NCBI RefSeq assembly: GCF_001194135.2
Contig: NC_068995.1
Span: 12,690,517 to 12,752,943 of the forward strand
Direction of reading: 5' to 3'
From: Octopus bimaculoides
Taxonomy: Eukaryota
Length of the DNA stretch: 62,427 nucleotides
The stretch's first letter is position 1; each line of letters begins with the position of its first letter. A model generated the notes under the pieces. That model made no database searches, was not told where the DNA came from, and was given only the letters and a program-made list of their open reading frames with translations. The position numbers and the translations under genes are program-made. Positions 39,811-40,003 of this stretch are shown here, in pieces.

Positions 39811-39938
39811 TCCAACCATCCATATATATATATCACGTTGAGAGCACCGGTTCTCGTCCGATCACCGAAGATAAACAACGTCGAGCCTAGTGAGTACTTA
39901 GATGGGTGACTGCTTGGGAAACCTAGGTGCTGTAAGCA
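39811..39938 (+). pseudogene. 5S rRNA: 5S rRNA-derived sequence, near full length
   Basis: atcacgttgagagcaccggttctcgtccgatcaccgaagataaacaacgtcgagcctagtgagtacttagatgggtgactgcttgggaaacctaggtgctgtaagca closely follows the metazoan 5S consensus (box A and box C recognisable). A TA expansion interrupts the first ~15 nt and there is no T-run terminator. Confidence 0.92.
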
Positions 39939-40003
39939 TCACACACTTTAACGGCGGTGCATTAGCATGGCCGCAGCTCTGAGCTGAAACTAGAAAACTA
40001 GAG
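39811..40003 (+). mobile_element. Candidate 5S-derived SINE (SINE3) or 5S/LINE chimera
   Basis: The 5S copy is followed after ~12 nt by ggcggtgcattagcatggccgcagctctgagctgaaactagaaaactaga, which matches the LINE 3' end at 56360-56402 (reverse). Confidence 0.65.

What the first reader, a model, noticed from the sequence alone, without database searches (positions are those of the whole stretch)
39811..40003. Candidate octopus 5S rRNA-derived SINE (SINE3) using the tail of a co-resident LINE
Seen: a near full-length 5S copy with recognisable box A and box C and no T-run terminator. It is followed ~12 nt later by ggcggtgcattagcatggccgcagctctgagctgaaactagaaaactaga, which matches the LINE end at 56360-56402 better than it matches the tRNA-SINE tail. 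The helix normally read gcccgg/ccgggt is gcctag/ctaggt, so pairing is kept by double changes. Known: SINE3 elements combine a 5S Pol III promoter with a LINE-derived 3' tail (e.g. zebrafish SINE3 with a CR1-type partner). I am not aware of one described in cephalopods but cannot check. Alternative: a one-off template-switch chimera analogous to U6/L1.
Basis: partly seen in the sequence, partly recalled or inferred. Interest (0 to 1): 0.8.

Follow-up and report, generated by a model that had tools for sequence, protein, structure and literature searches.

The report
5S rRNA copy fused to LINE tail
A dead, 5'-shortened copy of an octopus 5S ribosomal RNA is joined directly to the 3' recognition tail of a resident LINE retrotransposon, which is the build of a 5S-derived SINE, but I could not count copies, so a real family and a one-off chimera remain open.

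Summary
Window 39834-39937 is a strong 5S rRNA match (Rfam 84 bits, E 2e-16) that lacks the first ~14 nt and has no T-run terminator. After a 15-nt linker comes a ~50-nt module (39953-40002) that is 88% identical in register to the 3' end of the LINE fragment at 56357-56405(-), against 65-67% for the tails of the window's tRNA-SINEs.

The tails of the LINE, the tRNA-SINE and the 5S element each fold on their own into the same two hairpins. The second stem covaries between them, which fits a 3' recognition module of a "stringent" CR1-group LINE. A 13-nt low-complexity direct repeat brackets the whole 5S+tail unit.

Best reading: a single retroposed, 5'-truncated copy of a composite 5S-head/LINE-tail RNA, that is, SINE3 architecture. 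The decisive test, many dispersed copies with the same junction, could not be run because no octopus genome is reachable with these tools. Family membership therefore rests on inference, and a single template-switch chimera remains a live rival.

The "compensatory" helix changes are real but only weakly beyond chance, and no true octopus 5S reference was available. Nothing in the held literature describes an octopus or mollusc 5S SINE. A giant-squid genome paper notes about 24,000 uncharacterised 5S-derived loci. Interest is modest.

The parts
39821..39833 (.). Candidate 5' target-site duplication, CATATATATATAT (low complexity)
   Evidence: The identical 13-mer occurs at 40015-40027, so the pair brackets the whole 5S+tail unit. 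The 13-mer occurs 15 times in 50.8 kb of non-N sequence. This is suggestive, not proof.
39834..39937 (+). 5S rRNA-derived head, about positions 15-119. The 5' arm of helix I is missing. Helices II-V are intact apart from one broken pair.
   Evidence: Rfam RF00001, 84.1 bits, E 1.9e-16. There are 15 differences in 104 nt from a canonical metazoan 5S written from memory, and 1 of 29 pairs is broken.
39868..39917 (+). Internal control region equivalent: box A 39868-39882, intermediate element 39883-39888, box C 39899-39917
   Evidence: Positions were read from the Rfam alignment and the sequence. Function as a promoter was not tested.
39885..39890 (+). Helix V 5' arm, GCCTAG (canonical GCCCGG)
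   Evidence: It pairs with 39922-39928 with no non-standard pair. Two adjacent pairs are changed on both sides.
39922..39928 (+). Helix V 3' arm, CCTAGGT (canonical CCGGGT)
39938..39952 (+). Linker ATCACACACTTTAAC. It has no T4 terminator and is possibly the last codons and stop region of the LINE ORF2.
   Evidence: 9 of 14 positions are identical to the ORF2 end of LINE copy L003 (GCAGAAACGTTAAT, stop TAA) in the MAFFT alignment (L003 sequence). Weak.
39953..39972 (+). Tail hairpin 1, GGCGGTGC-ATTA-GCATGGCC
   Evidence: The same hairpin is predicted independently in the LINE, the second LINE and the tRNA-SINE tails. Its stem columns are invariant or nearly so.
39974..39986 (+). Tail hairpin 2, CAGCTC-T-GAGCTG
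   Evidence: The stem is identical to the window LINE. It covaries with L003 (CAGCCC/GGGCTG) and with the tRNA-SINE (CAGTC/GACTG).
39987..40014 (+). 3' terminal short repeats and A-rich end, AAACTAGAAAACTAGAGGGAAAAAAATA
   Evidence: AAACTAGA is shared with the window LINE. The LINE continues (TGAAA)n-like and the tRNA-SINE continues (AGTAAAAG)n.
40015..40027 (.). Candidate 3' target-site duplication, CATATATATATAT, which runs on into a longer (AT)n tract
56357..56405 (-). 3' tail of the co-resident 5'-truncated LINE fragment, the closest relative of the 5S element's tail
   Evidence: blastn 85.7% over 49 nt, E 8.5e-10. 38/43 in register.
56424..56690 (-). Remnant of the LINE ORF2 C-terminus (88 aa)
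   Evidence: 62% and 53% identical to two octopus proteins, P0001 and P0002 (Octopus vulgaris). The relative L003 carries a CR1-type C-terminal motif, read from translation and recognised from my own knowledge.
19034..19090 (+). Tail of a tRNA-derived SINE, a comparison member of the same tail superfamily
22970..23035 (+). Tail of a second tRNA-derived SINE copy (comparison)

Best explanation
The locus is one dead, retroposed copy of a composite RNA. That RNA has a 5S rRNA-like head carrying the type-1 Pol III internal control region. With no terminator in between, the head joins directly to the 3' end of a CR1-group ('stringent') LINE. The LINE part comprises perhaps the last ~15 nt of ORF2, a two-hairpin 3'UTR module and short terminal repeats.

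Inferred mechanism: Pol III starts upstream of the internal promoter of a source copy and reads through the tail to a T-run in flanking DNA. The LINE reverse transcriptase recognises the two hairpins and terminal repeats, nicks an AT-rich target and copies the RNA by target-primed reverse transcription. In this copy it stopped or joined about 14 nt short of the 5' end, within an (AT)n target.

I think it most likely that the source was a multi-copy 5S-derived SINE (SINE3-type) using the same LINE lineage that also serves the abundant octopus tRNA-SINE. This copy cannot make a normal 5S rRNA, because the 5' arm of helix I is absent.

Shown: the anatomy, the tail relationship and the shared hairpin fold. 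Inferred: retroposition as a single unit, the CR1-group identity of the partner, Pol III read-through, and family status.
For: The 5S head is strong and solitary (84 bits; no other 5S in the window).

There is no T>=4 run until 40137.

The tail is closest to the co-resident LINE. It folds into the same two hairpins as two LINE copies and the tRNA-SINE (z -2.3 to -3.9), and the second stem covaries.

A 13-nt direct repeat brackets head plus tail as one unit. 5' truncation is typical of LINE-mediated copying (established knowledge).

Stem changes preserve pairing more than random placement of the same substitutions would: P(<=1 broken pair)=0.019. Differences are clustered, 1 in the first 37 nt against 14 in the last 67 (P=0.013). 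All 7 CpGs in the 5' part are retained. Together these suggest that many differences were inherited from a diverged source RNA and are not decay after insertion.

Sampling argument (inference, assumes the window was not chosen for this feature): one copy in 51-72 kb of octopus DNA extrapolates to about 1e3-3e5 copies per 2.3-2.7 Gb genome.

Precedents: HaSE1/HaSE3 and CoeSINE4/CoeSINE5 are tRNA-head and 5S-head SINEs that share LINE-derived 3' parts (PMC5786205). About 24,000 5S-derived loci, 'likely SINEs', are reported in giant squid (PMC6962438).
Against: Only one copy was seen, and copy number was not measured.

All attempts to find further copies failed. Those collections hold almost no octopus repeat sequence (one search found only 2 relatives of the LINE ORF), so the negatives say little either way.

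The 5S reference used for the substitution analysis was written from memory. The true octopus 5S sequence could not be obtained.

The differences concentrate in the promoter half (box A 3' part, intermediate element, box C). That is not what selection for a SINE promoter would predict, unless those bases are native to octopus 5S.

The direct repeat is low-complexity (AT)n.

The CR1-group assignment rests on a motif I recognise, not on a database hit (searches gave nothing).
Confidence: 0.55

Rival explanations
1. One-off chimeric retro-pseudogene. The LINE reverse transcriptase began on a LINE (or SINE) RNA, copied about 65 nt of its 3' end, switched template to a cellular 5S rRNA and copied that to about position 15. 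This is the 5S analogue of U6/L1 chimeras. There is no family and no source gene.
For: The anatomy is the same as for the SINE reading. Only a single copy was observed. There is no body between head and tail, and the LINE-like sequence may start directly after the 5S 3' end. Template switching to small RNAs, including 5S, is documented for L1 and is proposed as the origin of composite SINE heads (PMC4824008; PMC4758252).
Against: The junction shows no trace of the 3' oligo-U of mature 5S rRNA; the sequence reads AAGC|ATCAC. The 15 differences from canonical 5S preserve structure and are clustered, with 7 of 10 CpGs intact. That fits a diverged source better than a fresh rRNA copy decaying neutrally, but this depends on a reference written from memory. 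Meeting a unique chimera in a random ~50-kb window of a >2-Gb genome is a priori very unlikely (assumes unbiased window choice).
Confidence: 0.3
2. Chance adjacency. A dispersed 5S pseudogene or orphon and an extremely 5'-truncated LINE or SINE 3' fragment (~65 nt) landed next to each other in two separate events.
For: The window is dense in LINE and SINE tails, with at least 5 tail copies in 51 kb. The linker similarity to LINE sequence is weak.
Against: The two parts have the same orientation. The LINE-like sequence starts within 0-15 nt of the exact 3' end of the 5S sequence. The direct repeat brackets both parts together. A solitary 5'-truncated 5S copy needs a retroposition route of its own, and a stringent LINE should not provide one without its tail (established knowledge of stringent LINEs, e.g. 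Kajikawa and Okada 2002, cited).
Confidence: 0.08
3. A functional variant 5S rRNA gene.
For: The Rfam score is high and helices II-V are intact.
Against: The 5' arm of helix I is replaced by (AT)n (non-standard-pair marks). There is no terminator. The copy is solitary and not in a 5S array.
Confidence: 0.01

Closest known systems
SINE3 (5S rRNA-derived SINEs; zebrafish SINE3-1, Kapitonov and Jurka 2003)
   Same: 5S-derived head carrying the type-1 internal promoter, loss of the 5S terminator, and a 3' part taken from a LINE that supplies the retrotransposition machinery.
   Different: Zebrafish SINE3 and the Deu-type 5S SINEs have a long body (Deu domain, partial tRNA). Here the head abuts the LINE tail with at most a 15-nt linker. 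Copy number is unknown. The host is a cephalopod mollusc; a 2024 review lists 5S SINEs only for reptiles, insects, fish and mammals (PMC10946416).
HaSE3/HaSE1 (Lepidoptera) and CoeSINE5/CoeSINE4 (coelacanth)
   Same: One genome holds a 5S-head SINE and a tRNA-head SINE that share LINE-derived 3' sequence (PMC5786205). Here the 5S element and the octopus tRNA-SINE carry tails of the same two-hairpin type.
   Different: Those pairs use RTE-derived tails, whereas this tail belongs to a CR1-group LINE (inferred). Here the 5S element's tail is nearer to the LINE than to the tRNA-SINE.
Octopus tRNA-derived SINEs (OK, OR1, OR2; Ohshima and Okada 1994)
   Same: Same genome and related tail module: GGCGGTGC..GCATGGCC, a second hairpin, then AAAC and short repeats.
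   Different: Their head is tRNA-derived and they have a ~250-nt body with a CCTTGGG core-like motif. At least 4 copies lie in this window, against 1 for the 5S element. I did not compare them with the published consensus sequences.
U6/L1-type chimeric retrogenes (Buzdin et al. 2003)
   Same: A small Pol III RNA copy fused at its 3' end to a 5'-truncated LINE 3' fragment and flanked as a unit by target-site duplications.
   Different: Those are made by L1, a relaxed LINE with poly(A) tails, and each is unique. Here the partner is a hairpin-tailed LINE, and the 5S part looks diverged rather than freshly copied.
UnaL2/UnaSINE1 (eel) stringent LINE-SINE pair (Kajikawa and Okada 2002)
   Same: A conserved 3' stem-loop plus short terminal repeats is shared by LINE and SINE and serves as the reverse transcriptase recognition signal. 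This is a working analogy for the mechanism.
   Different: Different clade, sequence and host. Recognition was not tested here.

Membership tests
SINE (SINEBase definition, PMC3531059) | Short (<1 kb), interspersed, non-tandem element | tested here: met
   The unit is about 181 nt (39834-40014). It is solitary, with no tandem 5S array.
SINE (SINEBase definition, PMC3531059) | [quoted passage not shown] | not testable with these tools
   There is one copy in the window. No octopus genome is searchable, and the indirect searches were empty but uninformative.
SINE (SINEBase definition, PMC3531059) | At least 60% identity to tRNA, 5S rRNA or 7SL RNA over at least 60 nt | tested here: met
   Rfam 5S_rRNA at 84.1 bits over the full model. 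89/104 positions are identical to a canonical metazoan 5S written from memory.
SINE (SINEBase definition, PMC3531059) | Distinct from an RNA pseudogene: extra non-RNA sequence and/or diagnostic changes shared among copies | tested here: inconclusive
   Extra LINE-derived sequence is present. Whether other copies share the diagnostic changes cannot be checked.
SINE3 (5S-derived SINE) | 5S-derived head retaining box A, intermediate element and box C | tested here: met
   All three are recognisable at 39868-39917, with 6 differences from canonical. Promoter activity was not tested.
SINE3 (5S-derived SINE) | 5S terminator absent, so transcription runs into the 3' part | tested here: met
   No T>=4 run occurs between 39834 and 40136.
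SINE3 (5S-derived SINE) | 3' part shared with a partner LINE in the same genome | tested here: met
   85.7% over 49 nt to the LINE end at 56357-56405(-). The two-hairpin fold is the same as in two LINE copies.
SINE3 (5S-derived SINE) | Transcribed by Pol III and mobilised by the partner LINE | not testable with these tools
   This needs small-RNA or Pol III ChIP data, or a retrotransposition assay.
Functional 5S rRNA gene | Complete helix I and a T-run terminator | tested here: not met
   The 5' arm of helix I is replaced by (AT)n and there is no terminator.
Template-switch chimeric retrogene | Unique junction, with the small-RNA part a direct copy of the mature cellular RNA including its 3' end | tested here: inconclusive
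   Uniqueness could not be tested. No oligo-T is present at the junction. The substitution pattern hints at a diverged source, but the octopus 5S reference is lacking.
CR1-group LINE (partner) | ORF2 with a reverse transcriptase of the CR1 clade, and a 3' hairpin plus short-repeat tail | tested here: inconclusive
   Only C-terminal remnants were available. An 'LE.IQR...SY.ERL..L.LYSLE.RRER' motif is read in L003 and I recognise it from memory as CR1-type. Pfam and PDB gave no hit. The hairpin tail is present.

The most novel reading that the evidence does not exclude
This is a copy of a so far undescribed multi-copy 5S-derived SINE family of octopods, the first characterised SINE3 in Mollusca. 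It would be a minimal head-plus-tail element that captured the two-hairpin tail of the same CR1-group LINE lineage that drives the dominant octopus tRNA-SINE. Its 5S head would have kept its RNA fold through compensatory changes.
Probability: 0.35. Interest if true: 0.5.

Novelty: new member of a known kind. Interest (0 to 1): 0.35.

Why it matters
If it is a family, it would extend 5S-derived SINEs to molluscs. It would also give a clean natural example of one LINE tail module serving two unrelated Pol III heads (tRNA and 5S) in a genome known for SINE expansion. The element would be minimal, head plus tail only, which suits dissection of what a hairpin-tailed LINE needs in order to recognise a template. 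It would also help explain the thousands of unexplained '5S' hits in cephalopod genome annotations and stop them being counted as rRNA genes. If it is a single chimera, it is an ordinary by-product of LINE activity.

Tried and rejected
1. Looking for other copies as spurious ORFs. I searched antisense translations of the tail/junction frame and of the 5S frame in the 5.8-billion-protein index, and the junction peptide by HMMER against 1.84 billion representatives. All were empty. The LINE ORF itself found only two octopus proteins, so these collections barely sample octopus repeats and the negatives say nothing about copy number.

2. Pattern scans for box C, a gap, then the tail. The metagenome scan gave one chance hit in a GC-rich bacterial gene. 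The viral scan gave none. The bacterial and archaeal genome scan gave seven chance hits in MAGs.

3. Exact look-ups of window ORFs, to locate the source assembly or an orthologous locus. Nothing was on record.

4. Obtaining a true cephalopod 5S rRNA sequence. Walker and Doolittle 1983 (PMC326244) is not held, and a text search for the canonical sequence found nothing.

5. Classifying the LINE with Pfam or PDB. There were no hits. L002 holds only a ~400-bp 3' fragment with no reverse transcriptase.

6. The octopus genome paper PMC4795812 is not held. Supplements of the giant squid, O. minor and octopus-brain LINE papers list no 5S SINE class.

7. I rejected the many sub-threshold 'miRNA' Rfam hits in the window as microsatellite artefacts.

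Full report
WHAT IS THERE

Rfam finds a single family above threshold in the whole 62-kb window: 5S_rRNA at 39820-39938(+), 84.1 bits against a gathering score of 38, E 1.9e-16. A permissive rerun finds no second 5S-like sequence; everything else is microsatellite noise hitting miRNA models.

In the alignment the first ~13 model positions fall on ...CCATATATATATAT and are flagged as non-standard pairs. The 5' arm of helix I is therefore absent, and real homology runs from CACGTTG at 39834 to GCTGTAAGC at 39937. Helices II-V are intact.

After the 5S end comes ATCACACACTTTAAC (39938-39952). This is followed by GGCGGTGCATTAGCATGGCCGCAGCTCTGAGCTGAAACTAGAAAACTAGA (39953-40002), then GGGAAAAAAATA, then a long (AT)n tract. 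No run of four or more T occurs from 39834 until 40137. The copy is solitary, in an AT-rich (37% GC), microsatellite-rich and gap-ridden stretch with 11,598 N.

THE TAIL

A blastn of the element against the window gives 85.7% over 49 nt (E 8.5e-10) to 56405-56357 on the minus strand. It gives weaker matches of 76.9% and 75% over 52 nt to 22966-23015 and 19030-19079.

The 56.4-kb match is the 3' end of a 5'-truncated LINE. Immediately upstream on the minus strand lies an 88-aa ORF remnant (56424-56690). Its only relatives in the protein index are two octopus proteins, P0001 (62%) and P0002 (53%, 'hypothetical protein, Octopus vulgaris').

The contig of P0001 (L003) shows the same arrangement. 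ORF2 ends at TAA and is followed at once by TGGCGGTGCCCCAGCATGGCCACAGCCCgtaaactaGGGCTGAAACCAGTAAAAGAATAAAAG. Its upstream translation carries an 'LE.IQR...SY.ERL..L.LYSLE.RRER' motif. I recognise this motif from memory as the C-terminal signature of CR1-group LINEs. Pfam and PDB searches give no support either way.

The two weaker matches are tails of a tRNA-derived SINE. That SINE has a ~250-nt body, a CCTTGGGCAAG core-like motif and (AGTAAAAG)n ends. At least four copies lie in the window.

Folded independently, the tails of the 5S element, the window LINE, L003 and the tRNA-SINE all give the same two hairpins, with z-scores of -2.3 to -3.9 against shuffles. Hairpin 1 (GGC.GUGC/GCAU.GCC) is nearly invariant. 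Hairpin 2 covaries: CAGCUC/GAGCUG in the 5S element and the window LINE, CAGCCC/GGGCUG in L003, and CAGUC/GACUG in the tRNA-SINE.

In register, the 5S element shares 38/43 positions with the window LINE and 28-29/43 with the tRNA-SINE.

The 14 nt before GGCGG are 9/14 identical to the ORF2 end of L003 but only 5/14 identical to the window LINE. This is weak evidence that LINE-derived sequence starts directly after the 5S 3' end.

ONE UNIT OR TWO?

CATATATATATAT occurs at 39821-39833 and again at 40015-40027, bracketing head plus tail. The 13-mer occurs 15 times in 50.8 kb. It is low complexity and cannot be called a proven target-site duplication. Its presence at both ends is nevertheless what insertion of the whole unit into an (AT)n target would give.

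Several features make two independent insertions unlikely. The two parts share one orientation. The LINE-like sequence starts at, or within 15 nt of, the exact 3' end of the 5S sequence. The copy is 5'-truncated. A hairpin-tailed ('stringent') LINE would not be expected to copy a bare 5S rRNA.

THE 5S HEAD

I compared the head with a canonical metazoan or molluscan 5S that I wrote from memory, because no octopus reference could be obtained. There are 15 differences in 104 nt, and ten of them are C>T or G>A.

Eight differences lie in paired positions, yet only one pair is broken (G.U to G-A in helix III). Two adjacent helix V pairs are changed on both sides (C-G to U-A, G-C to A-U). Three further changes convert G-C to G.U or G.U to A-U.

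I placed the same substitutions at random. At most one broken pair arises in 1.9% of trials (mean 4.3 broken). Two or more compensated pairs arise in 6.5% of trials. Structure is therefore preserved more than chance predicts, but the 'double change' alone is not significant.

The differences are also clustered: 1 in the first 37 nt against 14 in the last 67 (P=0.013). All seven CpGs in the 5' part survive, while the three in the 3' part are lost. Together these points suggest that many differences were already present in the source RNA and are not decay after insertion. The source could be a diverged SINE master, a 5S variant gene, or the genuine octopus 5S. Without the octopus rDNA sequence I cannot say which.

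A caution: the differences fall mostly in the promoter half (box A 3' part, intermediate element, box C). A SINE under promoter selection would not be expected to show that, unless those bases are native to octopus 5S.

FAMILY OR SINGLETON?

This is the decisive question, and I could not answer it directly.

- The DNA collections hold no octopus genome. Pattern scans gave only chance bacterial hits or nothing.
- Searches for spurious ORFs over other copies were empty. The LINE ORF, surely a high-copy sequence, found only two proteins, so these negatives are uninformative.
- Window ORFs are not on record in the contig index.
- The 20 kb of O. vulgaris DNA I could fetch (L002) has no 5S hit.

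What remains is inference.

(a) If the window was not chosen for this feature, one copy in 51-72 kb extrapolates to roughly 1e3-3e5 copies per genome (exact Poisson interval). That would be incompatible with a unique chimera.

(b) The head looks diverged rather than freshly copied.

(c) There are precedents for a tRNA-head and a 5S-head SINE sharing LINE-derived 3' parts in one genome: HaSE1/HaSE3 and CoeSINE4/CoeSINE5 (PMC5786205).

(d) The giant-squid genome paper reports about 24,000 loci derived from 5S rRNA, 'likely SINEs', left uncharacterised (PMC6962438).

Against this, only one copy was seen. Every anatomical feature is equally expected of a template-switch chimera, which is also the presumed birth event of such SINEs (PMC4824008; PMC4758252).

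MECHANISM (best reading, 0.55)

A source copy is transcribed by Pol III from the 5S internal control region. Because the terminator is missing, the transcript runs through the LINE tail to a downstream T-run. The partner LINE's reverse transcriptase binds the two-hairpin module and terminal repeats, nicks an AT-rich target and copies the RNA. This copy lost about 14 nt at the 5' end, possibly through ATA(T/C) microhomology with the (AT)n target. It is dead as an rRNA gene and probably as a source gene.

Shown: anatomy, tail relationship, shared fold. Inferred: everything about transcription, recognition and family status.

COMPARISON AND NOVELTY

In design this is a SINE3. It is simpler than zebrafish SINE3 or the Deu-type 5S SINEs because it has no body.

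By the SINEBase criteria it meets 'short and interspersed' and 'at least 60% identity to 5S over at least 60 nt'. The criterion of at least 100 copies is untestable here, so I do not file it as a SINE.

The held literature lists 5S SINEs for reptiles, insects, fish and mammals only (PMC10946416). It contains no octopus or mollusc 5S SINE. Repbase and Dfam could not be consulted.

If confirmed it would be a new member of a known kind, of moderate interest to transposon specialists. If it is a singleton, it is ordinary.

Noticed in passing
window 36270-35890(-), 18741-19090(+), 22946-23040(+), ~37830-37460(-), 4920-4850(-): There are at least four or five copies of a tRNA-derived SINE. It has box A/B-like GTGGCTATGTGG...GGGTTCAGCCC, a CCTTGGGCAAG core-like motif, an internal (TG)n tract and an (AGTAAAAG)n tail. 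These are probably the classical octopus SINEs of Ohshima and Okada 1994. The copy at 36270-35890 has an internal deletion that removes part of hairpin 1 and all of hairpin 2 of the tail.
   Followed up: partly
window 39660-39720: Just upstream of the 5S element, gagatcgactaaaacaactgaagacaa resembles a tRNA-SINE tail (TCGACTAAA...ACTGAAACAAG) with the two hairpins missing. It may be an older, deleted SINE end next to the insertion site.
   Followed up: no
window 29754-30374(-): A 206-aa ORF whose sequence (…KEQRESVKFCF…HHRTIDELV…KRVAAKFVLRLLKEDQRQLRL…TGEESWCYG) looks to me like the N-terminal part of a mariner/Tc1-type transposase. Pfam gave no hit at E<=0.01 and the ORF is not on record as a called gene.
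   Followed up: partly
window 55512-55596, both strands: Sub-threshold Rfam mir-598 matches (36.7 and 32.7 bits, gathering score 69) lie in a trinucleotide-repeat region. The giant-squid paper reports an unexplained 172 copies of mir-598, so such hits in cephalopods may be repeat artefacts.
   Followed up: no
whole window: 18.6% of the window is N (scaffold gaps). There are 51 (AT)n tracts of at least 12 nt, plus many (TG)n, (GA)n and trinucleotide runs. These produce more than 200 spurious sub-threshold miRNA matches, such as mir-297, mir-466 and mir-3149.
   Followed up: yes
L003 (GCA_024449705.1, 746-bp contig) 60-200: The LINE ORF2 in this contig needs a frameshift near SYWER|LRELRLYSLE to keep the conserved motif in frame, so that copy is degenerate too. 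The species of this assembly was not identified.
   Followed up: no
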